Shown in pieces: positions 12,355 to 63,348 of a stretch of DNA of 64,000 nt (the first letter of the stretch is position 1; each line of letters starts with the position of its first letter). Location of the stretch: positions 140,652-204,651 of the IMG/VR virus record IMGVR_UViG_3300035703_000010; one strand, 5' to 3'. The notes beneath the pieces were generated by a model. The model did not search any database, had not been told where the DNA came from, and saw only the letters and a program-made list of their open reading frames with translations. The position numbers were made by a program, and so were the translations under genes.

Positions 12355-12364
12355 ACATATGGGT

Positions 12365-13303: not shown

Positions 13304-13385
13304 ACGTGACGTACCTGCAAAAGTTTATGATATTCAAACCAAGAAAAATCATAACTTCATTGCAAATGGCTTCTTAGTTCATAAT
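13272..13385 (+). mobile_element. Split intein C-fragment (IntC, 38 aa)
   Basis: MLTPLKIKSIK..VYDIQT..NHNFIANGFLVHN followed by Cys+1 (TGC 13386-13388). Confidence 0.93.
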
Positions 13386-45131: not shown

Positions 45132-46655
45132 ATGGCAATCTTATCAATAAGAAACTTCGGCAATATACAAATATTGAGAGTTGATTCTAATCCAGAGGGT
45201 ATATCTGCTCCTACAAATTCACTTGCGACAGTATCCACTAGTCGAAACGTTTACAGAAACGTCGGAGGGACTAGCTGGCAATTATTGAATTCTGTTTCTA
45301 TATTACCTCCAGTTGTTCCGAAGCCAGGTTCCGGATCTGGTTCAGGTTCCGGAGGCGCACAAGGTGCTCAAGGAAGAGTTGGGCATCAAGGTCTTCAAGG
45401 CCTTCAAGGATATCAAGGAAGCCAAGGTACTATGGGCACACAAGGTGTTCAAGGTGCACAAGGCGCTTTTGGGTATGGACCTCAAGGAAATAGAGGTCCT
45501 CAAGGCCTTCAAGGCGTCCAAGGTGATGATGGTGTCCAAGGACCTCAAGGTGTTCCAGGATCTCAAGGAGCAACTGGTATTGGAGCTCAAGGATATCAAG
45601 GCCGACCTGGAAATAAAGGAGAAGATGCAACTGAACCTGGTCCTCAAGGTTATCAAGGTCCTCAAGGTAATACAGGACCTGCAGGAACGTCAGGAACTCA
45701 AGGCCTTCAAGGAGCTCAAGGCGTTCAAGGAGCTCAAGGAAGAGTAGGCCCTAACGGGTCTATTGGTCCTCAGGGTCTTCAAGGTGCCCAAGGACGACAA
45801 GGATCAGGCGGAATCGGTCAACAAGGTTCACAAGGATATGATGGTGCGCAAGGTAGATCTGGATCAGCTGGATCTCAAGGTACTCAAGGCGCTCAAGGAC
45901 ATCCTGGATCTGACGAAATTGGAGCTCAAGGTGCTCAAGGAGTTCAAAGCGTAGTTGCAGGCCCTCGAGGATATGCTGGATTAATTGGCCCACAAGGTGG
46001 GATAGGCCCACAAGGCGATACTGGAGCTCAAGGATACGGAATACCAGGTCCTCAAGGTGACGTTGGTGCTCAAGGGCATCAAGGTAGAATCGGTTCGAAT
46101 GGGTTATCAGGAAATACTGGAGATTCTAACGGGTCAGCTTTGATTCTAGTTGAAGCAAAACAAATCAGCACTGGAGTTCAAACAGTAACATTCGAAAATC
46201 TAGATGGAGATTCTGATAGAATTTATTTTATTAGAGGAAGAGTGTTAAGACCAGCAGGATCTGCAGGAACTACATTTACTTATTCAGTTCGTCCTAATGG
46301 ATTAACAACTAATTTAGCTTATATAAGCTACGGTGGATATTATAGCACCGCTGCAGGATCAAACGCTATCTCAACCAGCGCAGGATCTAGTGGGTATTTG
46401 ATAGGTAGCAGCACTTCTACAACAAGATTTGATCTTCAGATGTGGATTTCTGCTGAAAAAACGTTGCCTAGACTCTTCGACATCGCTATTAGCAGAAGAG
46501 TTTTTGATGGATCAAACCAACAATTTGATGTTTGGAGAAGCGGGGTTCGTTGGAATGAAACTACAACGAATTTAACATCAATAGAAATTAACTGTGATAG
46601 ATCTGGCGGTCTTGCTGCTGGAACTGAGCTTTACCTTTATAAATTAGTATGCTGA
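45132..46655 (+). CDS. Collagen-like fibre protein 1 (Gly-X-Gln)
   Basis: Long G-X-Y run dominated by GAQ/GPQ; shared N-domain (LRVD..P.G..NVGGTSW) and C-domain. Confidence 0.88.
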   Translation: MAILSIRNFGNIQILRVDSNPEGISAPTNSLATVSTSRNVYRNVGGTSWQLLNSVSILPPVVPKPGSGSGSGSGGAQGAQGRVGHQGLQGLQGYQGSQGTMGTQGVQGAQGAFGYGPQGNRGPQGLQGVQGDDGVQGPQGVPGSQGATGIGAQGYQGRPGNKGEDATEPGPQGYQGPQGNTGPAGTSGTQGLQGAQGVQGAQGRVGPNGSIGPQGLQGAQGRQGSGGIGQQGSQGYDGAQGRSGSAGSQGTQGAQGHPGSDEIGAQGAQGVQSVVAGPRGYAGLIGPQGGIGPQGDTGAQGYGIPGPQGDVGAQGHQGRIGSNGLSGNTGDSNGSALILVEAKQISTGVQTVTFENLDGDSDRIYFIRGRVLRPAGSAGTTFTYSVRPNGLTTNLAYISYGGYYSTAAGSNAISTSAGSSGYLIGSSTSTTRFDLQMWISAEKTLPRLFDIAISRRVFDGSNQQFDVWRSGVRWNETTTNLTSIEINCDRSGGLAAGTELYLYKLVC

Positions 46656-49150
46656 TGAAAGGAACATGATATGGCTGTTTTATTAAGAAAAAAATTTGGC
46701 ATCATAGACTTGTTAAGAGTTGATGCTGTTCCTGATGGAATAACGGCTCCTGTTAATTCATTGGCAACGTTGTCGACTAATGGAAGCATCTATAAAAACG
46801 TAGGAGGGACTTCATGGCAATTAGTGAGTTCTTCAACGTTACTTCTTCCTTCTAATGATGAAGGTGGACAAGAAGGAGGCGGAGGAGCGGGTTCTCAAGG
46901 CGCTCAAGGAGCAAGAGGCGTACAAGGTGCTCAAGGTGCTCAAGGACCAGTCGGAAATGAAGGTTCAAAAGGAACTTCTGGATTAGGTGGGCCAGGAGGT
47001 GATTCTGGTTCCGGAGCGCAAGGTTTACAAGGGCCTCAAGGATTATTAGGACCACAAGGTCGTCCTGGGATGGTCGGCGCGCAAGGACATCAAGGAGTCC
47101 AAGGAGCAAACGGCGATACTACCCAACAAGGGCCGCAAGGAAATCCTGGAATCAAAGGTGCAGATGGTTCAGATAGCATTGGGTCAATTGGCCCGCAAGG
47201 GTTGCCTGGATCGCAAGGACCTCAAGGACAAAGTTATGCTGGTTATGCTGGACATAGAGGCATGTCAGGAGATACTGGTCCTCAGGGATCTTCTAATAAT
47301 TCTCCAGGATTAACTGGACATACTGGATCACCAGGGCTTCCTGGAGATGGTGTACAAGGACCAGCAGGAAGCCCTGGTGATCCAGGGCCTCAAGGCGAAC
47401 CTGGTAATTCTGGATCTAGAGGTCATCAAGGAGCCCAGGGTATTCAAGGAAATGGAATCCAAGGGCAACAAGGAGCTCAAGGGGATAGAGGACCTCAAGG
47501 AACTATAGGGGTCATAGGGTCGCAAGGATCAATCGGCCCACAGGGCATAATAGGATCTCAAGGAGCTCAAGGTCCAATACTTCAAGGCGCTCAAGGTGTT
47601 CAAGGAAACGTTGGAGCTCAAGGTGATGTTGGAAATCAAGGATCAGCAGGATCTTCAGGAGTTCCAAATAGCGGATTGATATTGATAGAAAGCAAGTATG
47701 TTACTGACTCTGCAGCTTCATCTTTAACATTTTCAGATTTAGATGGAGATGTCGAAAAGAGTTACCTTCTAGTGTATAGATTATATGTTGAAGGATCTTC
47801 CTCAACGTTGTTCAATATTGATCTTAGACCTAACGGACAAACGACAGATATTTCAGGCGTTTACAGAACATCATATTCTTCAACGACGACAAACGGAAGT
47901 TTGTCTTCTCCATTGATCACTTCCGTTAGAGGAACTGGGTATGCTTTCGGAACATTTAGAATTTCAGGAAAAACAGGAATTCCTAGGTTCCTTTTTTCAA
48001 ACTATGTAGGTTATTCTCCTGCTCTTTCTGCTTTCTTTTCAGCCGAAAATGCGGTCTACTGGAATGAAACGACAACAAACTTGACTTCTCTAGTCGTTTT
48101 TGGTTCAAGTTCAGGGGTAGAAAGCTCATGTATAGGAGTTGGTAGCGAGTTTCATCTTTACAAATATGAGGTAGCATAATGTCAGTCTTATCTAGAAGAA
48201 GTTTTGGTAACATTGAATTATTAAGAGTTAATTCAAACCCAGATGGATCTGTAAGTTCTACCGTCGGATCTCTAGCAATAGTTGCATCCACTGGAATTAC
48301 TTACAAAAACGTAGGAGGAACTAGCTGGATAGCGACAAACTCTTCTGGTGTCGGAGGGTCAGGTGCACAAGGTGCGCAAGGAGCACAAGGTTTCATCGGA
48401 CTTCCTGGTGACAGAGGGACTCAAGGAGTTCAAGGTGTTCAAGGTGACGTCGGTTCTCAAGGAGCTCAAGGTGATACAGGAAGCGGTGCTCAAGGCGTTC
48501 AAGGAGACATAGGCCCTCAAGGGGCTCAAGGAATTAGTCCAACAGGAGCCCAAGGCGCTAGAGGATATCAAGGAAATGATGGCTCATATTCACCTCCAGA
48601 GAACATGAGAGGACCACAAGGCGTTCAAGGAGCTCAAGGAAGTTCTGGAGTAAGCCAAAGAGGAACTCAAGGTGTGATTGGGCAAACCGGTCCACAAGGC
48701 GATCCATCTGATGGAGAAATTGGCGCGCAGGGAGCTCAAGGGCTTCCTGGATTTCAAGGCGCTCAGGGATTACCTGGAGAATCTTCGAACGTTCAAGGTC
48801 CTCAAGGTTCTCAAGGCGCTCAAGGATATCAAGGATATGCAGATGGTCCAATGGGTGCCCAAGGCACTCAAGGTTCGCAAGGATCTCCTGGTGCAGCTGG
48901 GCCTCAAGGATATCAAGGCTATCAAGGGTTCGGAGGCGTAGTTGGCCCGCAAGGGCACCAGGGAGCATCAGGCCCACAAGGATATCAAGGTGCTCAAGGT
49001 GTACAAGGACTTACTGGACCTGATGGAAATCCAGGATTCCAAGGGTATCAAGGTCCAGAAGGAGTACAAGGTCCTCAAGGATTACAGGGGCATCAAGGAG
49101 CACAAGGCGTCCAAGGAACAATAGGGTTACAAGGAGTACAAGGATCTGGG
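45350..49150 (+). repeat. Three blocks of 9-nt periodic coding repeats (..CAAGG..)
   Basis: Recurrent GCTCAAGG/CCTCAAGG/TTCAAGG from Gly-X-Gln codons at about 45350-46130, 46890-47660 and 48360-49150. Confidence 0.85.
46671..48179 (+). CDS. Collagen-like fibre protein 2
   Basis: Same tripartite architecture. Confidence 0.88.
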   Translation: MAVLLRKKFGIIDLLRVDAVPDGITAPVNSLATLSTNGSIYKNVGGTSWQLVSSSTLLLPSNDEGGQEGGGGAGSQGAQGARGVQGAQGAQGPVGNEGSKGTSGLGGPGGDSGSGAQGLQGPQGLLGPQGRPGMVGAQGHQGVQGANGDTTQQGPQGNPGIKGADGSDSIGSIGPQGLPGSQGPQGQSYAGYAGHRGMSGDTGPQGSSNNSPGLTGHTGSPGLPGDGVQGPAGSPGDPGPQGEPGNSGSRGHQGAQGIQGNGIQGQQGAQGDRGPQGTIGVIGSQGSIGPQGIIGSQGAQGPILQGAQGVQGNVGAQGDVGNQGSAGSSGVPNSGLILIESKYVTDSAASSLTFSDLDGDVEKSYLLVYRLYVEGSSSTLFNIDLRPNGQTTDISGVYRTSYSSTTTNGSLSSPLITSVRGTGYAFGTFRISGKTGIPRFLFSNYVGYSPALSAFFSAENAVYWNETTTNLTSLVVFGSSSGVESSCIGVGSEFHLYKYEVA

Positions 49151-49645
49151 TTTTCTGACCAGGACTTAGTTTTATTAGAAAGCATATACGTTACTGGATC
49201 TGCGGCATCTTCAGTTACGTTTTCTAACTTAGATGGAAACACGGATAGAATGTATCTCATGGTCTACACAATAAAAGTTGGTGGCCCTTCAACGGGAGTC
49301 AACTATGACATTTCGATAAGGCCAAACAATTTAACCACAAATCAAGTTAGCTTCTTTAACGTAGCTTCTTCTGCAGGAATAGGACGTGGTTATTATTCTC
49401 CTATATTATTATCTAGAAACGCAAAAGGTACGACGCTGTTCGGAATGGTCGAAATAGCTGCGCAAACATCAGCGCAAAGAATATTCTCTATTAGATACAC
49501 TGCAACAACAGCAGTTACTGGCACGGCTTTTGGACATTGGAATGAAACTTCTACAAATTTGACTTCATTAGTCATCACGTCGGGTACATCCAGCACTTTA
49601 GACGTTGGTAGCGAATTCCACCTGTACAAGTATGCCACTGCATGA
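48179..49645 (+). CDS. Collagen-like fibre protein 3
   Basis: Same tripartite architecture; start overlaps the previous stop. Confidence 0.88.
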   Translation: MSVLSRRSFGNIELLRVNSNPDGSVSSTVGSLAIVASTGITYKNVGGTSWIATNSSGVGGSGAQGAQGAQGFIGLPGDRGTQGVQGVQGDVGSQGAQGDTGSGAQGVQGDIGPQGAQGISPTGAQGARGYQGNDGSYSPPENMRGPQGVQGAQGSSGVSQRGTQGVIGQTGPQGDPSDGEIGAQGAQGLPGFQGAQGLPGESSNVQGPQGSQGAQGYQGYADGPMGAQGTQGSQGSPGAAGPQGYQGYQGFGGVVGPQGHQGASGPQGYQGAQGVQGLTGPDGNPGFQGYQGPEGVQGPQGLQGHQGAQGVQGTIGLQGVQGSGFSDQDLVLLESIYVTGSAASSVTFSNLDGNTDRMYLMVYTIKVGGPSTGVNYDISIRPNNLTTNQVSFFNVASSAGIGRGYYSPILLSRNAKGTTLFGMVEIAAQTSAQRIFSIRYTATTAVTGTAFGHWNETSTNLTSLVITSGTSSTLDVGSEFHLYKYATA

Positions 49646-52051: not shown

Positions 52052-52275
52052 TAAACTACCTTTGATAACTCGCTTGAAAGAAAAGGACCTTCTATTAAAT
52101 CTTCAAAAAGAACATAATGATTCCAACAATAACTTTCAGAAACATTTTCTACATGTTTACTAGGATAATTGTTTGATGGTTTCGAAGACACAACAATACC
52201 ACATTTAGGTTTAAAGATATGATATACTAAGTCTCCGTTGTTTATTTTGCTTAACAAATTATACCTTAGAATCAT
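52051..52275 (-). CDS. Small hypothetical protein
   Basis: NGDLVYH..GIVV; coupled. Confidence 0.45.
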   Translation of the reverse strand: MILRYNLLSKINNGDLVYHIFKPKCGIVVSSKPSNNYPSKHVENVSESYCWNHYVLFEDLIEGPFLSSELSKVV

Positions 52276-53869
52276 TTAAAACTACGGCGTCTAAAGTCAT
52301 GAAAAGTTTTGCTACAGAAGTTGAATTTTTCAATGCTGTCTTAGTCACTTTTGCTGGATCAATAATTCCTGCTGAAATTAAATTGATAAACTTTCCTGTA
52401 GATGCATCATATCCTAGTCTTTGTTCTTTGTTTCTTGCCATTTCTTCTTCAACGACGTCAGCAGACTTATCTGAATTTTCAACAATTCTTCTTAAAGGCG
52501 CCTTACAAGCCTTAAGAACAACTTCTATACCAGCAAGAATATCTCTATCATAATCATTCTGCAATAGAACTGTCTTTGCTTCTTCTGCTGCGTAAAAAAG
52601 AGCTGAACCGCCGCCTGGAACAATTCCATCTTCAGCTGCTGCTCTTGTTGCATGTAAAGCATCTTCAATTCGATACTTTCTTTCAATCATTTCAATTTCT
52701 GTTGCACCACCGACCTTAATGATAGCAACACCAGAAGCTAATCTCGCAATTCTCATTTTTAAAATTGAAAGTTCTTCTTGGCTTAGCGTAATATCAGCCG
52801 ATCTGTTTCTTAGATCTTCTACATAAGAACTTACGTTTTCTTGAGTTGATTCGACACCAACAATAGTCGTTGATTTTGCATCAACGATAACTTTTTTCAT
52901 TTTGCCGAGTTCATTTAATGTCGTTTTTTCAAGAGAAGTTCCGTTTGTGCTCGAAATTAAAGTTGCTCCAGTTAGGACGCAAATGTCATTCAAGTAATCT
53001 GTTTTTGATGGACCGAATCCAGGAGCTTTGATTGCAATCACTTGAAGCTGAGTTTTTACTCTATTCAAAACCAATCCTTGTAGAGCTTCTCCTTCTACAT
53101 CATCAGCGATGATTAATAGAGGTTTTCTTGCTTCTAAAGTTCTTTCTAGAACTGGAAGGATGTCTTTAATCGTCGAGATTTTCTTGTCAGTAACTAGAAC
53201 ATATGCATCGTTATAACATGCATGCATTTTTTCATTATTTGTTACGAAATAAGGCGATAGATACCCTCTATCAAATTGCATGCCGTCGACGACATCAAGA
53301 GCAGTTGTCGTTCCTTTTGCGTCCTCTACAGTAATGATTCCGTCTCTTCCAACCTTTTCCATTGCCGAAGCGAGGATTTCTCCTATTTTTTCATCACCGT
53401 TTGCACTGATCGTGCCAATTTGTTTAATTTTTTCTGATGATTCTACTGGAGTTGACATTACTGACAAAAAGCTAGTTATCGTTTTAGTAGCTATGTCTAA
53501 TCCTTCGCATAACTTTTTAGAGTTATACCCAGCATCTAGAAGTTTCATTCCTTCTTTTACTAACGCGTGAGTAAGAACAGTAGAAGTAGTTGTACCATCG
53601 CCAGCAACATCATTGGTTTGAGAAGCTGCTTCTCTAAGTAGCTGAGCTCCCATCATTTCAAGAGGATCTGATAGTTTTACTGATTTGCTTACAGTAACTC
53701 CATCTTTAGTGACGATAGGAGAATTATTGCCGTTTTGGATTAGAACAGTCTTTCCGTTGGGTCCTAGCGTGCAGCTTACTGCTTCTGCAGCTAATCTCAA
53801 TCCATTATAAAGCTTTTTTCTTGCGTCTTTAGAAAAGACAATTCCTTCTACTTTAGTTTCAACATTCAT
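52259..53869 (-). CDS. groEL: Chaperonin GroEL (group I)
   Basis: TLGPNG, VTKDGVTV, AGDGTTTST, GMQFDRGYLSPYF, KVGGATE, VPGGG, GIIDPAKV; no GGM tail; start moved to ATG 53869. Confidence 0.97.
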   Translation of the reverse strand: MNVETKVEGIVFSKDARKKLYNGLRLAAEAVSCTLGPNGKTVLIQNGNNSPIVTKDGVTVSKSVKLSDPLEMMGAQLLREAASQTNDVAGDGTTTSTVLTHALVKEGMKLLDAGYNSKKLCEGLDIATKTITSFLSVMSTPVESSEKIKQIGTISANGDEKIGEILASAMEKVGRDGIITVEDAKGTTTALDVVDGMQFDRGYLSPYFVTNNEKMHACYNDAYVLVTDKKISTIKDILPVLERTLEARKPLLIIADDVEGEALQGLVLNRVKTQLQVIAIKAPGFGPSKTDYLNDICVLTGATLISSTNGTSLEKTTLNELGKMKKVIVDAKSTTIVGVESTQENVSSYVEDLRNRSADITLSQEELSILKMRIARLASGVAIIKVGGATEIEMIERKYRIEDALHATRAAAEDGIVPGGGSALFYAAEEAKTVLLQNDYDRDILAGIEVVLKACKAPLRRIVENSDKSADVVEEEMARNKEQRLGYDASTGKFINLISAGIIDPAKVTKTALKNSTSVAKLFMTLDAVVLNDSKV

Positions 53870-53911
53870 ATAATGTGATAATAGTAAGGTCTTTATCAAT
53901 CTTGTACACGG

Positions 53912-54235
53912 TTATGCTTTAGTTACTTGAATATAAACCGGTTGACCTCTTCTCCATGCCAGTGCGACATCACCTTTCATATAGTCATGTAATAAAGCGT
54001 AAAGAACCATCTTTTGTTGAGCATCATCAATAGTGTCGATATAGCGCTCAAGCTTTTTTTGTGAATAATCAATTAAATTCTTTCTTTTTCCAGAAAGAAT
54101 TGTCTGCTGACTAACATGCAAAGTAAACTCAGTGCATGAACCAAGTTTTGTATTTTGACCTTTAATGCCGTTAGTTCTCATTTTAAGCTTATTATCTACT
54201 GAAGCTTGTTCATAAGTAGTATTCGTTCCAAACAT
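53912..54235 (-). CDS. Hypothetical protein
   Basis: 107 aa, with SD GGAG and an upstream promoter. Confidence 0.55.
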   Translation of the reverse strand: MFGTNTTYEQASVDNKLKMRTNGIKGQNTKLGSCTEFTLHVSQQTILSGKRKNLIDYSQKKLERYIDTIDDAQQKMVLYALLHDYMKGDVALAWRRGQPVYIQVTKA

Positions 54236-56193: not shown

Positions 56194-56754
56194 TTATTTT
56201 CCTTTAAGAATTTTAGAAACTGGTTTTCTAGACCACATTCTGCAACTCCAGTAAGCTGCTTTTGTTCTATTAGAAGCTCTTGGTGTACCACACCCATGCC
56301 TTGCTCGGAAAGATTTTCTGGCTTTTGGATTATCTCTACGAATTTCCATGTTTGGATCACCAAACTCTACCTTTTTAACGTTTCCTGTCTTAGGATCTTT
56401 GACGTATACTTTGTATTTTTTTACGTCACCTTTCATAGGTTTTCCTAACTTGACTTCTCTTCCTTTGTATTTTGCTTCAACGATACATTCTCTTACTGAT
56501 TCATAATCAAGTTCAAATTGTTCAAAAACGTTCAAGTTTTGTAACATGATTCCTTCAGCAACGATTTGTTCTACTACTTCTTCAGGAAGATCTTCTTCTT
56601 CTATTCCATCTGGAAACCCCGCATAATAAAGCTGGTCAAGCTCGTCTGGTTCTAATGGTTCTCCAGTGGATGGTTCGTATCGACCAGGAGGATAGTTAAT
56701 TTGAGACAAAGACTCTCTAATTAATTGCTTTAAATTTGTGATTGATATCTTCAT
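56194..56754 (-). CDS. Leader-bearing protein with a basic C-terminal domain
   Basis: MKISITNLKQLIRES; IVEA-KYKGREV..SFRARH.C..AAYWSCRMW. Confidence 0.65.
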   Translation of the reverse strand: MKISITNLKQLIRESLSQINYPPGRYEPSTGEPLEPDELDQLYYAGFPDGIEEEDLPEEVVEQIVAEGIMLQNLNVFEQFELDYESVRECIVEAKYKGREVKLGKPMKGDVKKYKVYVKDPKTGNVKKVEFGDPNMEIRRDNPKARKSFRARHGCGTPRASNRTKAAYWSCRMWSRKPVSKILKGK

Positions 56755-56788
56755 ACGATATTTGATATATATCCTTTAAGGTAAAGAT

Positions 56789-57190
56789 ATGCACGATAAC
56801 ATGAATGGAAAAGACTGGAATGAAGGTCATCCAGACCATGAAGGAGAAATGGCTGTTTCTCAGCTTCATCGGTTGGTTGATATGGCGCAAATGTTACTAG
56901 ACGTCATTGGAGAAAATGATGAGTTACCTGCTTGGGTACAATACAAGTTAGGTAGATCTTATACTGATTTATCTGATGTTTTCGGATATATTGAGTCAGA
57001 ATCTCATCAAGGAATTCAATACGATCAACATGGAATGATGTTGCCAAACATCGATTCTCAAGTTTCTGAAGCGAAAAAAAGAGGTCTTTGGTATAACATT
57101 CACAAAAGACGAAAAGCAGGGAAAAAACGTCGCAAACCAGGCGAAAAGGGATATCCTGACGCAAAAGCTTGGAAAAAATTGACCAAATAA
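56789..57190 (+). CDS. DHEGEM..LPAWVQ domain protein with a basic tail
   Basis: Paralogous domain with 6017..6553; SEA-KKRGLWYNIH. Confidence 0.6.
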   Translation: MHDNMNGKDWNEGHPDHEGEMAVSQLHRLVDMAQMLLDVIGENDELPAWVQYKLGRSYTDLSDVFGYIESESHQGIQYDQHGMMLPNIDSQVSEAKKRGLWYNIHKRRKAGKKRRKPGEKGYPDAKAWKKLTK

Positions 57191-57221
57191 GTTAAGTTAA
57201 TTAAATTTTGAGAATTATTAC

Positions 57222-57377
57222 ATGATTATGATAGCATGTCATATGATCATTGCTACTCTAGCAATTGGTCTATTCGTTTGCACGTTAAAAATAAAGTCTA
57301 ATCCAAAGATTCCAAAGCCATCATTTTCTAGCAGCAGAAGCGTTGACTTTCCCGACGATTTTGATTTTTGGAATTAA
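57222..57377 (+). CDS. Small membrane protein (51 aa, not in the ORF track)
   Basis: MIMIACHMIIATLAIGLFVCTL..DFDFWN. Confidence 0.4.
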   Translation: MIMIACHMIIATLAIGLFVCTLKIKSNPKIPKPSFSSSRSVDFPDDFDFWN

Positions 57378-57431
57378 TGTTATTTATCGAATATTCATTT
57401 TGCTGATAGGTACTTATAATCAAGGTATCTA

Positions 57432-58598
57432 ATGAGTATTTTTAGAGAACACAAGACAGTCGCTGATCGTACGGCTTCTGACCGTAGAAGACATAAGCAT
57501 AAGATTGAAAAAGCCATACGAGAAGGTATTCATCATATCGTTGCTGATGAAAGCATTATCAGCAAAGATGGAAAACAAAAATATCGTATCCCAGTAAGAG
57601 GAATAAAAGAATATCGTTTCGTATACGGAAGTAACGGTAAACAAGTTGGATCTGCTCCTGGGAGAGATGTAAAACGAGATCAAAAAATTGGTGATCCTCC
57701 GCCTCAAGGCCAGGGAGGGCAACCAAACAAGGCAGGTGGCGATAAAGGTGAAGAATATTATGATGTTGAAATTACGCACGAAGAGTTAGCTGAATATCTC
57801 TTTGCGGAATTAAAACTTCCAGAACTTCAAAGAAGACAATTAAAAAACATTGAATCAGAAAAGCTGAAAAGAAAAGGTTATCGTCCACAAGGAATCATGC
57901 CGAGGTTGGACAGGAAGAAGTCTGCAATTGCTCGCATCAAGCGAATGAAGGCTGCTGGATTTGATCCTGAAAAAGCCGAAGACGGAGAAACCTTCTCTTT
58001 TCATGAAGATGATCTTGTTTATCGACACTACAAGATGAAGAAAAAGCCATGCACAAATGCCGTTATTTTCTTCGTCATGGATGTTAGCGGATCGATGTCA
58101 CAAGAAAAGAAGTTTCTCGCAAGATCGTTCTTCTTCCTTCTATACCAATTTCTTCGTCTTAAGTATGAAACGATTGACATCGTCTTCATATCTCATGATA
58201 CCGAAGCTAAAGAAGTTGAAGAAAAAGAATTTTTTACAAAGGCTTCGACAGGAGGAACTAGAGCTTCTTCAGCTATATCAATGACGAACGATATTATAGA
58301 GAAGAGATATCATCCTTCATCATGGAACATTTATTTGTTTCAATGTTCTGATGGTGATAATTTTTCCGATGATAATGAGAAATTTATACAAGAAGTTCAA
58401 AAAGCTATGTCAGTTTCGCAGCTATATGGTTATTGCGAAATTGAACCTGAAACAAGCTGGATGTCAGAACCTGGAAGATTGTATGGGTTATTGCGGCCTC
58501 TTCAAGGAAACGTTTTAAAAGAAGTTAGAATTCAAAAACGAGAAGATGTGTGGCCAGCATTCATGAGTTTAATGAACGGCGCGAAGGAGGATGAGTGA
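57432..58598 (+). CDS. yeaH: YeaH/YhbH-family (DUF444) von Willebrand A domain protein
   Basis: D..RH..I..AI, IPVRGIKEYRFVYG, MIDAS FFVMDVSGSM, GGT..SSA, WNIY.FQCSDGDN. Confidence 0.93.
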   Translation: MSIFREHKTVADRTASDRRRHKHKIEKAIREGIHHIVADESIISKDGKQKYRIPVRGIKEYRFVYGSNGKQVGSAPGRDVKRDQKIGDPPPQGQGGQPNKAGGDKGEEYYDVEITHEELAEYLFAELKLPELQRRQLKNIESEKLKRKGYRPQGIMPRLDRKKSAIARIKRMKAAGFDPEKAEDGETFSFHEDDLVYRHYKMKKKPCTNAVIFFVMDVSGSMSQEKKFLARSFFFLLYQFLRLKYETIDIVFISHDTEAKEVEEKEFFTKASTGGTRASSAISMTNDIIEKRYHPSSWNIYLFQCSDGDNFSDDNEKFIQEVQKAMSVSQLYGYCEIEPETSWMSEPGRLYGLLRPLQGNVLKEVRIQKREDVWPAFMSLMNGAKEDE

Positions 58599-59905
58599 TG
58601 GATTATAAATTAGAAGACCTAAAAGTGTGGGATGAAAGAATCGTCGCTCTAGCTAAAAAGCACAATCTAGATTGGTTTGAACTAGATTACGAGGTCATCG
58701 ATTATCATGAAATGATCGGTGCCATGGTCCATCATGGCATGCCATCCATGTATTCTCATTGGTCGTTTGGAAAGTCTTTCGAACAAACGATGAATCGTTA
58801 TAATCTCGGAGCCGAAGGACTACCTTACGAGCTAATCATCAACAGTGATCCTTCTCTTGCTTATCTCATGAGAGAAAATCCGTTATACCTCCAGATTCTC
58901 ATCATGGCTCACTGCGTTGGACATTCAGATTTCTTCAAGAACAACAGAATGTTCAAGAACACACGTCCAGAATCCGTGATCCAACGTTTGCGTTCTGCCA
59001 AGAAGAGAATTCAAAAGTACGTGGAAGATCCCCACATCGGAATTGATGCAGTAGAAAGAACGTTAGACGCATGTCAGGCTCTTCAGTTTCAAACGACAAA
59101 GTATGGTCAAGTTCGTCGCCCTCATGCCGAGATAAAAGCAGAATACATCGAATTGATCAACAACGATAAAGACGGAAAATACAAAAACTTCAACATCGAT
59201 ATCGTTCCACTAGAACCAGACTACGATCTTCTTGGATTCATCGAAGAAAACGCTAGGATTCCAGAGTGGAAGCGCGATATCATCCATGTTTGCCGAGAAG
59301 AAGGTCAGTATTTCTGGCCACAAATTCAAACGAAGATCATGAATGAAGGTTGGGCTTCATACTGGCATTACACGCTTTGCCACGAGCTCGAGCTTCCTGG
59401 TGAACTTCACCTTCCAATCGTCAAGATGCACAATGCCGTCGTCAGACCACACATCGGAGCAATTAATCCTTACCACCTTGGATTCCATCTTTTCCAAAAG
59501 ATAAAGGAACGTCATGGAATTGAAGAGTGCTTCTTGGCTCGCGAGGTTTGTTACGACTCATCGTTCTTGCGTCAGTATCTTACTGAAGAAGATTGCATCG
59601 ATTTAAATCTTTTTTCTTATTCTTTCAAGAAAAAGATTGGAATCACGGTTGATGACGTTTCTGACGAAAGAGGATGGAAACAAGTAAAAGAAGATTTAAT
59701 TTCAAACGTTGCGGGAGGATCAATTCCTGTCGTATATGTAGATGAAGTAAAAAAAGATAGAATGCTAATTGTTCGTCATGAACATGAAGGTAGAGATTTA
59801 GACATAAAGCATGCAAATGAAGTAGTTGAACACATAAAAAATTTATGGGATGGTCAGGTTAAGTTTTATACGATGTTAGAAGACGAACCTTGGGAAATTG
59901 ATTAA
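58595..59905 (+). CDS. spoVR: SpoVR/YcgB-family protein
   Basis: GMPSMYSHWSFGK, YELIINSDP, AHCVGHSDFFKNN, TKIMNEGWASYWH, NPYHLG. Confidence 0.95.
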   Translation: MMDYKLEDLKVWDERIVALAKKHNLDWFELDYEVIDYHEMIGAMVHHGMPSMYSHWSFGKSFEQTMNRYNLGAEGLPYELIINSDPSLAYLMRENPLYLQILIMAHCVGHSDFFKNNRMFKNTRPESVIQRLRSAKKRIQKYVEDPHIGIDAVERTLDACQALQFQTTKYGQVRRPHAEIKAEYIELINNDKDGKYKNFNIDIVPLEPDYDLLGFIEENARIPEWKRDIIHVCREEGQYFWPQIQTKIMNEGWASYWHYTLCHELELPGELHLPIVKMHNAVVRPHIGAINPYHLGFHLFQKIKERHGIEECFLAREVCYDSSFLRQYLTEEDCIDLNLFSYSFKKKIGITVDDVSDERGWKQVKEDLISNVAGGSIPVVYVDEVKKDRMLIVRHEHEGRDLDIKHANEVVEHIKNLWDGQVKFYTMLEDEPWEID

Positions 59906-59936
59906 CTCTAGCCTTAGAAGAGGATACATATAAATT

Positions 59937-61874
59937 ATGAGCAGCATCAAGAAACAACTTTTACAACAAATTAAAACAGCACGCGAAGAATCTAGCAAGA
60001 CCAAAAAGTTTTCTGGAAACTTAATGGACTACATCGAGATGGTCGAAAAAGATCCATCCGTCGTCAAGTCCGCCCACAAACGTCTTCATGACGCTATCGA
60101 AGAACACGGCTCCTACGTGTTGCCGGATTCAGATCCAAGAAAGTTTAAGATTTTTGATGGCGAGAACATCAAGATTCACAAATACTTCGAAGGCGAGTTC
60201 TTCGGAATGGAAACCGTCATCGAGAAGGTCATGAGCTTCTTGTCATCCGCAGCTCACAAAGGTGAAGAGTCACGTCAGGTTCTTCTCCTCATGGGACCAG
60301 TCGGCGCTGGTAAGTCTGCCCTAACAGAGCACATCAAGAAGTCTCTTGAAGGCAAGAAGTACTACACACTAAAGGGTGATCCCCATCGTGGCGAACCTCT
60401 TCAGTTAATTCCAAGATCTCTTCGTCCTTCAGTAGAGTCAGCCATCAATGTGAAGATCGATGGTGACATCTCACCTGTCGCCCGTCACAAGCTTCTCAAC
60501 GATTACGCTGGCAAGTACGAGGACTTCGAGGTTGAAGAAGTTACCTTCTCGCAACGTGGTCGTCGTGGTGTAGCTTCTGTTCCTCCGATGGATGCTAACT
60601 CTCAAGACGTTTCCGTTCTCATCGGATCAGTCGATATTTCAAAGCTTGATAAGTTTGCAGAGGATGATCCAAGAGCTCTTTCTCTTAATGGTGCATTCAA
60701 CGTTGGTAATCGTGGCATCGTTGAACTCGTCGAGGTCTTCAAGAACGAGATTGAGTTCCTCCACACGATCATCACCGCGACCCAAGAGAAGCGCGTCCCA
60801 TCACCAGGCAAGTCAGACATGCTTCACTTCGATGGTGTCATCCTCGCACACTGTAACGAGGCTGAGTGGAATCGTTTCCAGTCAGAACACACCAATGAAG
60901 CCATCATGGATCGTATCGTAAAGATCTCAGTTCCTTACTGCCTTGAGCTTAACCAAGAGGTTAAGATCTATGAGAAGATGCTGGGTAAGTCAGAGTTTAA
61001 GTCACACATCGCTCCACACACCTTGAAGATTGCCTCAATGTTCTCCGTCATGAGTCGACTCAAGGATTCGGCTAAGTGTGACCTTCTCACCAAGATGAAG
61101 ATCTACAACGGTGAAGACGTCCTTGAAAAGGGACGCGTTCGTAAGGTCGACATCAAGGATCTCAGAGAAGAAGCTAAGCATGAAGGAATGGATGGAATTT
61201 CAACACGCTTCATTACGAAGGCTCTTGACAATGCTCTTACTGCATCCGACAAGAACATGATCACACCAATCTCTGTCATGGATTCTTTGACCAAGATGGT
61301 GAAAGAACAATTAATCGATGAACAATTTAAGTCAAAGTGCCTTGAGCTTCTTCAGAAGACTATCCGCGAAGAATATCTAAAGATTTTAGAGACAGAGATA
61401 GCAAAAGCTTTCATTACTGCTTATGAAGAACAAGCTCAATCTTTGTTTGAATCTTATTTAGATAACGCAGAGGCTTACACAACTCGTGCAAAGCTTAAGG
61501 ATAGAGTTACTAAAGAAGAAAGAAAGCCTGATGAACAATTTATGACTTCTATCGAAGAGCAAATTGGAGTTACAGGTTCTTCTCGTGACGGATTCCGCTC
61601 TGACGTTACTGCATACATGTTTGCAAAGATGCGCAGAGGAGAAAAGGTTTCTTATGCTACGTATGAACCTTTGAAGAATGCAATTGAATCATATTTGATT
61701 TCTTCAGTTCGCTCTATGGCACGAATTGTCACTAAGTCCAAGACTCGTGACGAAGATCAACAAAAGAAATACAGCGACATGGTTCAAACTATGATCAAAG
61801 ATTATGGTTATTCTGCAGAATCAGCAGAAGAGATTTTAGTCTTCGCTTCAAATAACCTTTGGAGAGACTCTTGA
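59937..61874 (+). CDS. prkA: PrkA/YeaG-family AAA+ ATPase/serine kinase
   Basis: FFGME, Walker A GPVGAGKS, NRGIVELVEVFK, ILAHCNEAEW, EGMDGISTRF, YSAESA. Confidence 0.96.
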   Translation: MSSIKKQLLQQIKTAREESSKTKKFSGNLMDYIEMVEKDPSVVKSAHKRLHDAIEEHGSYVLPDSDPRKFKIFDGENIKIHKYFEGEFFGMETVIEKVMSFLSSAAHKGEESRQVLLLMGPVGAGKSALTEHIKKSLEGKKYYTLKGDPHRGEPLQLIPRSLRPSVESAINVKIDGDISPVARHKLLNDYAGKYEDFEVEEVTFSQRGRRGVASVPPMDANSQDVSVLIGSVDISKLDKFAEDDPRALSLNGAFNVGNRGIVELVEVFKNEIEFLHTIITATQEKRVPSPGKSDMLHFDGVILAHCNEAEWNRFQSEHTNEAIMDRIVKISVPYCLELNQEVKIYEKMLGKSEFKSHIAPHTLKIASMFSVMSRLKDSAKCDLLTKMKIYNGEDVLEKGRVRKVDIKDLREEAKHEGMDGISTRFITKALDNALTASDKNMITPISVMDSLTKMVKEQLIDEQFKSKCLELLQKTIREEYLKILETEIAKAFITAYEEQAQSLFESYLDNAEAYTTRAKLKDRVTKEERKPDEQFMTSIEEQIGVTGSSRDGFRSDVTAYMFAKMRRGEKVSYATYEPLKNAIESYLISSVRSMARIVTKSKTRDEDQQKKYSDMVQTMIKDYGYSAESAEEILVFASNNLWRDS

Positions 61875-61906
61875 GATTCTGAGTAATTTAAAATAATCTA
61901 AAATAA

Positions 61907-61930
61907 AAGGCCAATGGAAACGTTGGCCTT
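61907..61930. terminator. Terminator-like hairpin after prkA
   Basis: AAGGCCAA-TGGAAACG-TTGGCCTT flanked by A/T runs between convergent genes. Confidence 0.7.
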
Positions 61931-62036
61931 ATTTATTTCTATTTTTTAAACGCCTATAGGCATAGGCAATCCCAGGTATAACGAATGTCCACGGTGTTGC
62001 TAGCACTATAAAAATTAAAATAGATTTATAGTTCAT
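61929..62036 (-). CDS. Possible 35-aa membrane peptide
   Basis: MNYKSILIFIVLATPWTFVIPGIAYAYRRLKNRNK. Confidence 0.35.
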   Translation of the reverse strand: MNYKSILIFIVLATPWTFVIPGIAYAYRRLKNRNK

Positions 62037-62043
62037 TATAAGA

Positions 62044-63348
62044 TTAAATATATTTTGCGCCTGGTTGTCGTTGGTCTTTTAATGCAACAAGGTCTGCAAC
62101 AACATAAGGTACTTCGTAAGAAAACGGACTGGGACCCATAATCCTAGTTTCTTTGTATAATCTTACAGGTTGAAATCTTGATTTTGCTGGCGGGTATGCA
62201 GATTCAAGGAACGGTCTTAGACCTTTGTGGCACCAGTACAAAAATCTTCTCTCATCCCATTTTGATCTATGAGACGGATCGCAGGTTGCTCCTATTCCTA
62301 ATGCATGAGGAGTATATGATAAAAACCATCCTCCTGGAACCAAGCATCTATAAATTTCATCCATCAGCCAGAAAGCATCAAGATCTTCGCCATGCTCAAG
62401 AAAATCAAATGCCCTGAAAGCGCCGATAGAGTTATCTTCAAAAGGAAGTTTTTTTGAACCAAAAACGTCATGAAACACGTCTGGATTTCCAGATATGTCT
62501 AGCGTTTTCCATCCAGGAGCTCCAAAGATACCGCCGCCTAGATCAAATTTAGGCAATCCTTTTACGTCACACTCTCTTGCGACTAAGTCATGTATGTACT
62601 TGTCGCGGAGCAACATAGGTTGAGCCTCGGCAGGTATTTCTAAGTTTTTTCCTTGGCCGCAAAGTCTTTGAATTTCATCACAGTTTTTAAGCCAAGTATT
62701 TTCGCCGTCTGCCCGTCTACGATAACCATAAAGAGGCTTTTCTATATATCGAAATTTTGTTTTTAAATACGTTCTTGCGATTAAATCAAAGTCATCAGCA
62801 ACGTTCAAAGTAACGTCATGACCTCCGACTTCATCATATACTGATTTTCTCCAAGCCCTGAAATGGTTAGGAGCATAAAGTATTTGACATATAGATCTAG
62901 CAGTGGGATGAAATGACCTTGTAGCAAGAAGATTTCTGCCTCTTATTTCACAAGGATAAGATTCCCATCCATACGCTTCACCGTATGTGAAGGGTTCTCC
63001 TGTAGCATCTACCCATTCTGCACAATCTGAATAAGCAAATCCGACTTCAGGATCTTCAAATGCCTTTTCTGCTTCAAGAAGAGCATTTTCAGCTAAAATG
63101 TCATCATGATCTAACTCAAGAAGAATTTCTCCATGAGCAGATTGGCATAGTTGCTTTTTTGCATCTCCTACGCCTTTCCATTCTCCTGTACTAATAATCC
63201 TAACTCTAGGATCTTTAGGAATATTATCTAAGTCAGGATTTCCATTAATTCCTATCAACCATTCAAATTCGACAGGTTGATCAACTAATGATTCCCATGC
63301 ATCTTTTAACCAAGTTGTATTATTAGTAGGAGTAAAAATTGATATCAC
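62044..63348 (-). CDS. GT2 glycosyltransferase fused to a class I SAM methyltransferase-like domain
   Basis: ISIFTPT, LELDHDD (DxD), DDFDL; C-terminal DLGGG..LPF..NSI..DFLEH..LVPGG. Confidence 0.85.
   Translation of the reverse strand: MISIFTPTNNTTWLKDAWESLVDQPVEFEWLIGINGNPDLDNIPKDPRVRIISTGEWKGVGDAKKQLCQSAHGEILLELDHDDILAENALLEAEKAFEDPEVGFAYSDCAEWVDATGEPFTYGEAYGWESYPCEIRGRNLLATRSFHPTARSICQILYAPNHFRAWRKSVYDEVGGHDVTLNVADDFDLIARTYLKTKFRYIEKPLYGYRRRADGENTWLKNCDEIQRLCGQGKNLEIPAEAQPMLLRDKYIHDLVARECDVKGLPKFDLGGGIFGAPGWKTLDISGNPDVFHDVFGSKKLPFEDNSIGAFRAFDFLEHGEDLDAFWLMDEIYRCLVPGGWFLSYTPHALGIGATCDPSHRSKWDERRFLYWCHKGLRPFLESAYPPAKSRFQPVRLYKETRIMGPSPFSYEVPYVVADLVALKDQRQPGAKYI

What the first reader, a model, noticed from the sequence alone, without database searches (positions are those of the whole stretch)
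57432..61874. Complete YeaH-SpoVR-PrkA triad in a phage, with prkA last
Seen: three intact adjacent genes (MIDAS DVSGS, HxxGH, Walker A), with yeaH and spoVR translationally coupled. Established: these families are linked to stationary phase, nitrogen starvation and sporulation, and bacteria normally place prkA/yeaG upstream of yhbH/yeaH. Inference: the phage carries the whole AAA+/vWA machine to steer host dormancy or remodel a target complex.
Basis: partly seen in the sequence, partly recalled or inferred. Interest (0 to 1): 0.65.

Follow-up and report, generated by a model that had tools for sequence, protein, structure and literature searches.

The report
Phage copy of starvation-proteolysis gene trio
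An uncultivated freshwater giant phage, like at least 175 related viral contigs, carries an intact and strongly conserved copy of the bacterial YeaH-SpoVR-PrkA trio, a module that E. coli needs for bulk protein breakdown in starvation, so the phage may use it to turn host protein into building blocks; similar trios are already annotated in Thermus phages.

Summary
Window 57432-61874 holds three intact same-strand genes: yeaH (DUF444, vWA with a full MIDAS motif), spoVR and prkA (AAA+ with a PrkA C-domain). The yeaH stop overlaps the spoVR start, and a hairpin terminator follows prkA.

It is not contamination or misassembly. The contig has a terminase, portal, baseplate and tail fibres. Contigs from four other studies bridge both junctions. 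Among 80 related IMG/VR contigs, 76 of 76 with enough flank show the same order, and dN/dS is 0.01-0.05.

All three gene trees make the phage clade monophyletic. Its sister is a Bdellovibrionota-type prkA-yeaH-spoVR operon. In my sample, 51 bacterial loci with enough flank put prkA first.

The prkA-last order is not new. Four Thermus phages (phiYS40, 2006) have it, and they acquired it independently (AU p = 0.0004).

Two new leads:
- SpoVR models as a zincin-like fold that lacks the catalytic Glu.
- The YeaH N-terminus is predicted to bind SpoVR (score 0.82, best control 0.11).

Most likely function (inferred): a phage-run version of YeaG-dependent starvation proteolysis that recycles host protein. 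Steering of sporulation or dormancy is less likely. Expression could not be tested.

The parts
57432..58598 (+). yeaH/yhbH homologue (DUF444), 388 aa. The N-terminal region (1-24, 56-89) is predicted to dock on SpoVR. Residues 57-108 form a Gly-rich disordered linker. The C-terminal half (about 195-385) is a vWA domain with a complete MIDAS: D217, S219, S221, T276, D307.
   Evidence: Pfam PF04285, E 2.5e-107. TIGR02877 scores 379.6 bits, below its 468-bit cut-off. MIDAS residues are invariant in 37 sequences. AF2 model pLDDT 72. Foldseek vWA matches reach E 3e-7, probability 1.0. Complex interface.
58598..59905 (+). spoVR/ycgB homologue, 435 aa from the ATG at 58598 (436 aa from the GTG at 58595). 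It is a short form that lacks two insertions present in Bdellovibrionota and Pseudomonadota. Invariant residues include E78, H105, H109, Q242, N249-E250-G251 (MNEGWA) and H257.
   Evidence: Pfam PF04293, E 2.9e-114, plus PF24755. Alignment A2. AF2 model pLDDT 85.8, pTM 0.84. In the VIA-align wide search, about 45 of the top 50 hits are zincin metallopeptidases, Z 11.3-6.3, over residues 1-339.
59937..61874 (+). prkA/yeaG homologue, 645 aa. It has an N-terminal AAA+ domain (Walker A GPVGAGKS, residues 120-127) and a PrkA C-terminal domain.
   Evidence: Pfam PF08298, E 1.8e-136, and PF06798, E 2.2e-80. NF011999 scores 403 bits, below its 576-bit cut-off. Aligns over residues 23-639 to solved chain 9xip_A, 'Serine protein kinase', E 3.2e-93.
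58585..58600 (+). Coupling junction. The Shine-Dalgarno-like AAGGAGGA lies inside the end of yeaH, and the yeaH stop TGA overlaps the spoVR start (GTGATG).
   Evidence: Sequence read directly. The junction is -8 to +3 nt in 72 of 81 related loci.
61907..61930 (.). Hairpin with a 10-bp stem and T-runs on both strands. It lies 33 nt after the prkA stop, between the convergent prkA and the glycosyltransferase gene, and is the likely bidirectional intrinsic terminator that closes the operon.
   Evidence: Terminator scan. This is a consensus match only; function was not tested.

Best explanation
Shown:
- Window 57432-61874 is a three-gene operon, yeaH-spoVR-prkA.
- It belongs to an uncultivated freshwater or groundwater jumbo tailed phage.
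- It is a conserved module of a large clade of such phages, not host DNA.

Inferred from trees:
- The module was captured once as a unit from a Bdellovibrionota-type prkA-yeaH-spoVR operon.
- prkA then moved from first to last place, and the module has been kept under strong purifying selection since.

Inferred mechanism, about 40% likely:
- The phage runs its own copy of the bacterial YeaG/YeaH/YcgB system during infection. In E. coli that system is required for starvation-induced bulk degradation of cytoplasmic proteins.
- In this way the phage converts the proteome of a nutrient-limited host into amino acids and energy for synthesis of a very large virion and genome.

Proposed division of labour:
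- PrkA is the AAA+ motor.
- YeaH docks through its N-terminal region on SpoVR and keeps its vWA/MIDAS face free for PrkA or substrates.
- SpoVR is a zincin-like metal-binding subunit. It is either a non-canonical hydrolase or a scaffold.
For: Identity and phage origin:
- Family assignments and motifs.
- Terminase, portal and baseplate on the same contig; tail fibres and polymerase in the window.
- 175 IMG/VR contigs encode a PrkA 63-95% identical. Of the 80 kept, 76 of 76 with enough flank have yeaH-spoVR-prkA.
- One of these is a 293,409-bp genome with direct terminal repeats, where the trio lies internally.
- Neighbouring genes are conserved only in the closest ~10 contigs, while the trio is conserved in all.
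- dN/dS is 0.01-0.05 in all three genes.
- Contigs of four other studies bridge both junctions, some with 0-1 differences.

Origin:
- The phage clade is monophyletic at 100/98/100 in the PrkA, YeaH and SpoVR trees. Its sister is the Bdellovibrionota main clade, at 97/85/90.
- Among 1.84 billion representatives, only four exceed 41% identity. The best of them nests inside the Bdellovibrionota clade and has the order prkA-DUF444-spoVR.

Mechanism:
- YeaG (SpdA) is required for RpoS-dependent, largely non-specific turnover of cytoplasmic proteins, which supplies amino acids and ATP (PMC13684143).
- yeaG, yeaH and ycgB are mutually cofit in six bacteria (bioRxiv 10.1101/072470).
- PrkA is a clade III AAA+ protein. 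Pure protein shows no kinase activity and no protease activity (PMC13001217), so partners are probably needed.
- YeaH-SpoVR complex prediction: score 0.82, best of 3 controls 0.11. This mark was reached by 58 of 80 solved complexes and 2 of 110 mismatched pairs. The runs agree in at least 87% of contacts, and partner pLDDT is at least 87. My own alignments were used, so these counts hold only roughly.
- No solved homologue of either chain was found by sequence.
- SpoVR has a zincin-like fold.
- In a relative (L015), an intein sits exactly after the invariant NEGWA of SpoVR. This marks the motif as functionally central.
Against: - There is no expression data. No RNA run holds the sequence.
- No biochemistry exists for any phage copy.
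- The E. coli result shows only that YeaG is required for proteolysis. It does not show that YeaG is the protease, and the roles of YeaH and YcgB in that process are not reported in the paper.
- SpoVR lacks the catalytic Glu of HExxH (HCVGH here, HVYGH in Bdellovibrionota, HACYGH in Pseudomonadota).
- Foldseek and sequence profiles found no peptidase match.
- VIA Z scores of 8-11 are within the range that helical models can reach by chance (note).
- Model coordinates could not be inspected, so the metal site is unverified.
- The host is unknown.
- The trees are quick LG+G4 searches with SH-aLRT support only. Only three labelled phyla were sampled, and the root is not inferred.
- Bulk proteolysis could also harm the phage's own proteins.
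Confidence: 0.4

Rival explanations
1. Targeted remodelling rather than bulk recycling. The phage machine unfolds or removes a few specific host proteins (regulators, defence proteins, ribosome hibernation factors) or the phage's own early proteins. The vWA/MIDAS face of YeaH selects the target.
For: - AAA+ motors paired with vWA/MIDAS adaptors usually act on defined complexes. The YeaH vWA model matches the Rea1/MDN1 MIDAS and Rpn10 vWA structures.
- Mutant phenotypes of the bacterial trio differ between species.
- B. anthracis PrkA is proposed to act in a regulatory way.
Against: - The only in-vivo biochemical read-out so far is broad, largely non-specific protein loss.
- No candidate target is encoded next to the trio, and the neighbouring genes vary.
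Confidence: 0.22
2. The trio acts as a signalling module, with PrkA as a Ser kinase, that steers host dormancy, stationary-phase entry or sporulation. It would keep a starving host infectable or block its shutdown.
For: - The families were named from sporulation phenotypes.
- yeaG is induced by nitrogen starvation and RpoS and affects survival (PMC4664914 listed).
- Older work reported kinase activity of YeaG, as cited.
Against: - Two groups detected no kinase activity in purified PrkA (PMC9512850; PMC13001217).
- No Pkinase-type Pfam hit was found.
- The nearest relatives are Bdellovibrionota and the habitat is freshwater and groundwater. Sporulation is therefore unlikely to be the target.
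Confidence: 0.15
3. A virion-assembly or maturation role. The AAA+/vWA/SpoVR set chaperones or processes phage structural proteins instead of acting on the host.
For: - In Thermus phage Lalka8 the trio lies between the portal/minor head genes and TerL.
- In phiYS40 it lies next to the large terminase gene.
- In this window a GroEL-like chaperonin lies 3.5 kb upstream.
Against: - In the aquatic clade the neighbours are variable and not structural.
- On this contig, terminase and portal lie about 120 kb away.
- The same module works in bacteria that have no virions.
- In RsoM2USA and the huge phages it keeps the bacterial layout.
Confidence: 0.08
4. Host contamination, a chimeric assembly, or a decaying passenger with no function.
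For: - The trio lies only 2-6.5 kb from the contig end.
- It has slightly higher G+C (0.39-0.44) than the window average.
- IMG/VR flags one related record as a provirus.
Against: - 76 of 76 related viral contigs carry it in the same order, including internal positions in 235-361-kb contigs and a complete genome with terminal repeats.
- Junctions are bridged in four independent studies.
- Frames are intact and dN/dS is 0.01-0.05.
- Other parts of the window, such as the polymerase and tail fibres, have the same higher G+C.
Confidence: 0.01

Closest known systems
Bacterial prkA(yeaG/spdA)-yeaH(yhbH)-spoVR(ycgB) operon
   Same: - The same three Pfam families and domain make-up.
- Walker A, the MIDAS motif and the SpoVR invariant residues are all kept.
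- All three genes are linked and under selection.
- The nearest cellular versions (Bdellovibrionota) are 53%, 42% and 39% identical for PrkA, YeaH and SpoVR.
   Different: - The order is yeaH-spoVR-prkA instead of prkA-yeaH-spoVR.
- The phage YeaH and SpoVR are shorter, at 388 and 436 aa against about 405-418 and 483-486 aa in Bdellovibrionota. SpoVR lacks a ~28-residue insertion and part of a variable linker.
- Scores fall below all NCBIfam equivalog cut-offs.
- The module is carried by a virus, so it is expressed on the phage's schedule and not under RpoS or NtrC control (inference).
Thermus phages phiYS40/TMA, phiLo, MN1 and Lalka8 (GenBank DQ997624, MH673673, LC754405, PQ109075)
   Same: - They are phages with the complete trio in the same yeaH-spoVR-prkA order.
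- Adjacent genes overlap or abut. In phiYS40 an extra 616-aa ORF lies between spoVR and prkA.
   Different: - PrkA is only 27-34% identical.
- They form their own clade elsewhere in the PrkA tree (99*).
- Holding them together with the aquatic clade is rejected (delta lnL 246, p-AU 0.0004), so the acquisition and the permutation were independent.
- Their hosts are thermophiles and some have small genomes (69-178 kb).
Ralstonia jumbo phage RsoM2USA and huge phages LR745206 and LR756502
   Same: - They are jumbo or huge phages that carry the trio.
- RsoM2USA ORF30 (PrkA) and ORF28 (SpoVR) are listed in its paper (PMC8504454).
   Different: - They keep the bacterial order prkA-yeaH-spoVR.
- They branch beside Pseudomonadota, so these were separate captures from a different donor lineage.
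FtsH/YME1-type AAA+ zinc proteases
   Same: - What it may work like: an AAA+ motor of the classic clade with a pore loop (PMC13001217).
- The motor is combined with a zincin-fold module.
   Different: - The motor and the zincin-like protein are separate polypeptides.
- SpoVR has no HExxH Glu.
- No PrkA-SpoVR contact was tested.
- Membership is not claimed.
MoxR-type AAA+ / vWA pairs (RavA-ViaA, CbbQ-CbbO); recalled from memory, a lead only
   Same: An AAA+ ATPase is encoded next to a vWA/MIDAS protein that acts as an adaptor to a target complex.
   Different: - PrkA is not a MoxR-family AAA+; no such Pfam hit was found.
- A third conserved partner, SpoVR, is present.
- In the model, the YeaH N-terminus, not the vWA domain, holds SpoVR.

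Membership tests
PrkA / YeaG family | AAA_PrkA domain (PF08298) followed by the PrkA C-terminal domain (PF06798), both full length | tested here: met
   E 1.8e-136 (profile positions 2-357 of 358) and E 2.2e-80 (1-255 of 255).
PrkA / YeaG family | Intact Walker A P-loop in the AAA+ domain | tested here: met
   GPVGAGKS at residues 120-127. G120, P121, V122, G123, G125, K126 and S127 are invariant in 15 clade members.
PrkA / YeaG family | Equivalog of E. coli YeaG by NCBIfam NF011999 (cut-off 576 bits) | tested here: not met
   403.3 bits. It is a family member but not an equivalog.
Hanks-type Ser/Thr protein kinase | Protein kinase catalytic domain recognisable by profile | tested here: not met
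   No Pkinase-type family at E <= 0.001 in Pfam. The literature reports no kinase activity for purified PrkA.
YeaH / YhbH (DUF444) | DUF444 profile match over the whole protein | tested here: met
   PF04285, E 2.5e-107. TIGR02877 scores 379.6 bits, below its 467.95-bit equivalog cut-off.
YeaH / YhbH (DUF444) | vWA fold with a complete MIDAS (DxSxS ... T ... D) | tested here: met
   D217, S219, S221, T276 and D307 are invariant in 37 sequences. Foldseek finds 82 PDB matches at E <= 0.001, all vWA domains among the rows shown.
SpoVR / YcgB | SpoVR (PF04293) plus SpoVR_C (PF24755) | tested here: met
   E 2.9e-114 and E 3.7e-09. NF008737 scores 270 bits, below its 679-bit cut-off.
Canonical bacterial prkA-yeaH-spoVR operon | prkA is the first gene, followed by yeaH and then spoVR | tested here: not met
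   The window order is yeaH-spoVR-prkA. Bacterial loci put prkA first: 33 of 33 Pseudomonadota and 18 of 18 Bdellovibrionota main loci with enough flank.
Zincin (gluzincin) metallopeptidases, for SpoVR | Thermolysin-like fold: a beta-sheet followed by an active-site helix and further helices | tested here: inconclusive
   In the VIA-align wide search, about 45 of the top 50 hits are zincin peptidases (DUF885 3o0y, Z 11.3; M1, Z 9.3-9.6; thermolysin, Z 8.0), with 160-199 residues aligned. Foldseek found no match at E <= 0.001, and Z in this range can arise by chance for helical models.
Zincin (gluzincin) metallopeptidases, for SpoVR | HExxH motif with the catalytic Glu | tested here: not met
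   The motif is H105-C-V-G-H109. The second position is C, V or A across the family, and the His spacing differs by one residue in Pseudomonadota.
Zincin (gluzincin) metallopeptidases, for SpoVR | Third metal ligand (Glu) placed next to the two His in space | not testable with these tools
   Candidates are E153/D157 and E250 (MNEGWA).
Lon-type AAA+ protease, for PrkA | C-terminal Lon protease domain with a Ser-Lys dyad | tested here: not met
   Only a weak match of TIGR00763 to residues 81-139, around the P-loop (E 5.2e-05, 21.9 bits against a cut-off of 608). No Lon_C family hit.

The most novel reading that the evidence does not exclude
SpoVR is the missing hydrolytic or metal-binding subunit of a three-part, FtsH-like degradation machine. 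PrkA is the unfoldase, YeaH the vWA adaptor tethered to SpoVR by its N-terminus, and SpoVR a divergent zincin. This would explain why pure PrkA has no protease activity although YeaG is needed for bulk starvation proteolysis. Tailed phages captured the machine at least three or four times, and twice converged on the order yeaH-spoVR-prkA, in order to cannibalise the host proteome.
Probability: 0.2. Interest if true: 0.85.

Novelty: new member of a known kind. Interest (0 to 1): 0.55.

Why it matters
The biochemical role of the YeaG/YeaH/YcgB (PrkA/YhbH/SpoVR) trio has been an open question for about 30 years. Only in October 2026 was it tied to bulk starvation proteolysis in E. coli (PMC13684143).

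This finding adds several points:
- An abundant aquatic jumbo-phage clade keeps a compact version under strong selection.
- Phages acquired the trio several times independently.
- The trio therefore looks like a self-sufficient, portable machine that is useful to a virus.

It would be a new class of phage 'auxiliary' function: recycling host protein, alongside the well-known recycling of host DNA.

Cultivable phages that carry the trio (Thermus phages, Ralstonia RsoM2USA) give a simple genetic system to test this.

Two structural leads suggest concrete experiments on the bacterial system as well. One is the predicted binding of the YeaH N-terminus to SpoVR. The other is the zincin-like fold of SpoVR, with an intein marking the NEGWA motif.

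Tried and rejected
- **Megablast against phages.** The trio against 50,697 phage records gave no match.
- **Cluster look-up.** The look-up of the four NCBI-sourced relatives returned no names or accessions.
- **GTDB genome scan.** The scan with clade-specific peptide patterns returned only seven MAG contigs from six unrelated phyla. I read these as mis-binned phage contigs. Four have the phage gene order and nest inside the phage clade, and 0 of 80 other Verrucomicrobiota genomes have any PrkA.
- **Foldseek for SpoVR.** The model against the PDB gave nothing at E <= 0.001. A sequence profile of SpoVR against PDB sequences gave nothing.
- **Promoter scan.** It found fewer sigma-70-like sites than in shuffled sequence (5 against 11.9), so no promoter is claimed.
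- **RNA evidence.** None of the 20 runs that hold the sequence is RNA, so expression is untested.
- **Mixture-model trees.** LG+C20 trees did not finish in two attempts. All trees are quick LG+G4 searches. The AU test did not finish on 101 rows and was run on 42 rows. The group tested was named after a first tree had been seen.
- **Host hint from isocitrate lyase.** The phage's isocitrate lyase was found in only 2 of 81 genomes of the Bdellovibrionota sample, so it gives no host signal.
- **PrkA contacts.** The PrkA-YeaH and PrkA-SpoVR contacts were not modelled, because only one complex job is allowed.
- **Contamination and misassembly.** Considered and rejected.
- **Literature.** No paper in the held library discusses the trio as a phage module or SpoVR as a zincin.

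Full report
**1.

The ORF list gives three same-strand frames at exactly the stated coordinates:
- 57432-58598 (388 aa)
- 58595-59905 (436 aa from a GTG; an ATG follows at 58598)
- 59937-61874 (645 aa)

Pfam assigns them as follows:
- DUF444, E 2.5e-107
- SpoVR, E 2.9e-114, plus SpoVR_C
- AAA_PrkA, E 1.8e-136, plus the PrkA C-domain, E 2.2e-80

NCBIfam hits are strong, but all fall below the equivalog cut-offs. The proteins are therefore family members and not close orthologues of the E. coli or Bacillus proteins.

The quoted motifs are all present:
- MIDAS: FFVMDVSGSM
- SpoVR: AHCVGH
- Walker A: GPVGAGKS

The yeaH stop overlaps the spoVR start (GTGATG), and AAGGAGGA lies just upstream. A 10-bp hairpin flanked by T-runs lies 33 nt after prkA, between it and a convergent glycosyltransferase gene. 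Table 11 was used throughout. The one read-laying run used 5,951 letters.

**2. It is a phage, and the trio belongs to it**

The window is the last 64 kb of a 204,651-bp IMG/VR contig that CheckV rates about 60% complete.

The contig carries phage hallmark genes:
- large terminase, portal, baseplate wedge and a helicase
- inside the window, a DnaE-type polymerase and three collagen-like tail fibres
- a GroEL-like chaperonin

There is no close cultured relative.

Evidence that the trio is a stable part of this phage lineage:
- A scan of IMG/VR found 175 contigs encoding a PrkA 63-95% identical. Of the 80 kept, all 76 with enough upstream sequence have yeaH-spoVR-prkA in that order.
- Several hold it far from any contig end, in contigs of 235-361 kb. 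One of them is a 293,409-bp genome with direct terminal repeats whose DnaE is 67% identical to the window's.
- Neighbouring genes are recognisable only in the ~10 closest contigs, whereas the trio is recognisable in all.
- Where synonymous sites are not saturated, dN/dS is 0.01-0.05 for each gene.
- Near-identical sequence occurs in 20 runs from 9 studies of freshwater, aquatic, groundwater and subsurface metagenomes.
- Logan contigs from four of those studies bridge the upstream junction (56500-58840 with 0 differences; 56540-57655) and the downstream junction (61274-62450; 61025-62450; 61401-62450).

Contamination and misassembly are therefore excluded. No RNA run holds the sequence, so expression is untested.

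**3. Where it came from**

The exhaustive search of 1.84 billion representatives found only four above 41% identity: 52, 47, 46 and 58% (the last a fragment). Everything else is at or below 41%. The two best lie on contigs with the order prkA-DUF444-spoVR.

Labels for the genome samples come from the NCBI titles of three MAGs that carry phage-like contigs:
- PrkA occurs in 75 of 81 genomes of the Bdellovibrionota sample.
- It occurs in 33 of 150 Pseudomonadota genomes.
- It occurs in 0 of 80 Verrucomicrobiota genomes.

A Bdellovibrionota operon is 53, 42 and 39% identical to the phage PrkA, YeaH and SpoVR. Pseudomonadota versions are 28-36% identical.

In quick LG+G4 trees:
- The phage clade (21 IMG/VR contigs plus 4 MAG-binned contigs) is monophyletic, with SH-aLRT of 100, 98 and 100 for PrkA, YeaH and SpoVR.
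- Its sister in all three trees is the main Bdellovibrionota clade, at 97, 85 and 90.

The congruence of the three trees argues for one capture of the whole operon. The direction of transfer and the root are inferred, not shown. Only three phyla carry labels.

**4. Gene order**

Bacterial loci put prkA first:
- All 33 Pseudomonadota loci put prkA first: 31 are prkA-yeaH-spoVR and 2 are prkA-yeaH only.
- All 18 Bdellovibrionota main loci with enough flank do the same.
- A second, divergent paralogous set in Bdellovibrionota has spoVR-yeaH-prkA.

Among phages the order differs by lineage:
- The aquatic clade has yeaH-spoVR-prkA.
- So do four different Thermus phages: phiYS40 (with one extra ORF), phiLo, MN1 and Lalka8.
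- RsoM2USA and two ~640-kb uncultured phages keep the bacterial order.

In the PrkA tree:
- The Thermus phages form their own clade (99*).
- The huge phages and RsoM2USA sit beside Pseudomonadota.
- A tree that forces the aquatic clade and the Thermus phages together is rejected: delta lnL 246, p-AU 0.0004, on 42 rows.

So phages acquired the trio at least three times, and the prkA-last order arose at least twice. The arrangement is therefore not new; it has been in GenBank since 2006. Its recurrence is noteworthy. One possible reason is that it places the coupled YeaH-SpoVR pair ahead of the motor, but this is speculation.

**5. What the proteins look like**

PrkA:
- It aligns over nearly its whole length (residues 23-639) to a solved 692-residue 'Serine protein kinase', 9xip.

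YeaH:
- The five MIDAS residues are invariant in 37 sequences spanning phages, Bdellovibrionota and Pseudomonadota.
- Its modelled C-terminal half is a canonical vWA domain.

SpoVR:
- It has no solved relative by sequence.
- Its AF2 model is confident (pLDDT 85.8).
- Foldseek found nothing.
- The exhaustive VIA-align search returned zincin metallopeptidases in about 45 of the top 50 rows: DUF885, M1/LTA4H, M3, M32, thermolysin, M61, ACE and DPP III. Z is 11.3-6.3 over residues 1-339.
- The two invariant His lie on the helix that follows the beta-strands, as in zincins. The invariant MNEGWA recalls the M1 'NEGFA' ligand motif; that resemblance is recalled from memory and is only a lead.
- The HExxH Glu is absent, and the spacing between the two His is not fixed.
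- I therefore call SpoVR zincin-like and do not file it as a peptidase.
- In one relative (L015), an intein with a LAGLIDADG endonuclease is inserted exactly between NEGWA and the following Ser. Inteins typically sit in functionally critical motifs (established knowledge).

YeaH-SpoVR complex prediction:
- The score is 0.82, against 0.11 for the best of 3 controls.
- That mark was reached by 58 of 80 solved complexes and by 2 of 110 mismatched pairs.
- The runs agree in at least 87% of contacts, and partner pLDDT is at least 87.
- My own alignments were used, so these counts hold only roughly.
- The interface uses YeaH residues 1-24 and 56-89. It includes segments that were disordered in both single-chain models, and it leaves the vWA domain free.
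- The model supports binding but does not show it.

**6. What it most likely does**

Established points from the literature:
- Purified PrkA has ATPase activity and oligomerises, but shows no kinase activity. In the more stringent preparation it also shows no protease activity.
- E. coli needs YeaG (renamed SpdA) for RpoS-dependent, largely non-specific degradation of cytoplasmic proteins after carbon exhaustion. That degradation supplies amino acids and ATP for new synthesis.

My inference is that the phage encodes a self-contained, constitutive version of this machine and uses it during a long jumbo-phage infection of a nutrient-poor host to feed its own synthesis. I put this at about 0.4. 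Rivals are:
- targeted remodelling of particular host or phage proteins, 0.22
- a virion-assembly role, 0.08
- artefact, 0.01

That the trio is a genuine, functional phage module I put at about 0.95.

**7. Novelty and score**

The gene families, their linkage and their presence in some phages are known. The trio appears in phage annotations (phiYS40, MN1, RsoM2USA) but is not discussed as a module in any paper of the held library.

New here:
- the size and conservation of the aquatic clade
- the Bdellovibrionota-type origin
- the independent acquisitions and the repeated prkA-last order
- the compact SpoVR and YeaH forms
- the two structural leads

I file it as a new member of a known kind, with interest 0.55. 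The main reason for that score is timing. With the 2026 link to bulk proteolysis, cultivable phages that carry the trio make a testable system for an old open question.

Noticed in passing
window 34019-35269 (-): The phage encodes a full-length isocitrate lyase (PF00463, E 4.5e-100), a glyoxylate-shunt enzyme tied to growth on acetate or fatty acids. Like the trio, it is a 'starvation metabolism' function. A homologue was found in only 2 of 81 genomes of the Bdellovibrionota sample (63-70% identity).
   Followed up: partly
L015 4035-5267 (IMGVR_UViG_3300006802_020762): In this relative, SpoVR is interrupted in frame by an intein with a LAGLIDADG homing endonuclease (PF14890, PF14528). It is inserted exactly after the invariant NEGWA motif and before the Ser, which marks that motif as functionally central.
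   Followed up: yes
proteins P0130, P0134, P0163, P0166 (relatives): PrkA relatives of 1,000-1,570 aa are PrkAs with one or two inteins (plus LAGLIDADG) inside the AAA domain. They are not domain fusions.
   Followed up: partly
record of L022 (IMGVR_UViG_3300034073_005389, 361,490 bp): Its PrkA is 81% identical to the window's, but its DnaE is only 29% identical. Records with 65-73% PrkA identity have 46-69% DnaE identity. This suggests exchange of the trio between phage lineages, or a replaced polymerase. IMG/VR labels this record a provirus.
   Followed up: no
L178 and L179 (G208:C1, G173:C2): Some Bdellovibrionota genomes have a second, divergent paralogous trio (PrkA about 720-730 aa) in the order spoVR-yeaH-prkA. 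This is a different permutation that also puts prkA last.
   Followed up: partly
L084-L090 (GTDB species-representative MAGs): Contigs of this phage clade are binned into MAGs labelled Bdellovibrionota, Halobacteriovorax, Legionellales, Luteolibacter, Proteobacteria and Anaerolineaceae. These are probably binning errors, since 0 of 80 other Verrucomicrobiota genomes have any PrkA. Two of the seven bins are Bdellovibrionota, which is at most a weak host hint. L089, in a Patescibacteria bin, has the bacterial order and branches with Bdellovibrionota.
   Followed up: partly
window 9661-14555 (+): The DnaE-type Pol III alpha is split into two ORFs (9661-12354 and 13272-14555). A 320-aa ORF with no Pfam hit lies between them (12341-13303). 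Relatives encode it as one frame of 1,199-1,297 aa.
   Followed up: no
window 52259-53899 (-) and 53912-54235 (-): A GroEL-like chaperonin (PF00118, E 4e-67; 43-47% identical to chaperonins in other phage records) lies 3.5 kb upstream of the trio. A 107-aa ORF with no Pfam hit sits in the position of a co-chaperonin.
   Followed up: no
window 45132-49645 (+): Three tandem paralogous collagen-like tail-fibre genes (507, 502 and 488 aa), in a stretch with higher G+C (0.41-0.44).
   Followed up: no
window 62044-63348 (-) and 6590-7666 (+): A GT2 glycosyltransferase fused to a methyltransferase domain is convergent with prkA. Elsewhere in the window there is an IMPDH/GMP-reductase family gene (PF00478, E 1e-88).
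   Followed up: no
L002 3007-4857 (Thermus phage phiYS40 YS40_058): phiYS40 has an extra 616-aa ORF with no Pfam hit between spoVR and prkA. The other Thermus phages lack it.
   Followed up: no
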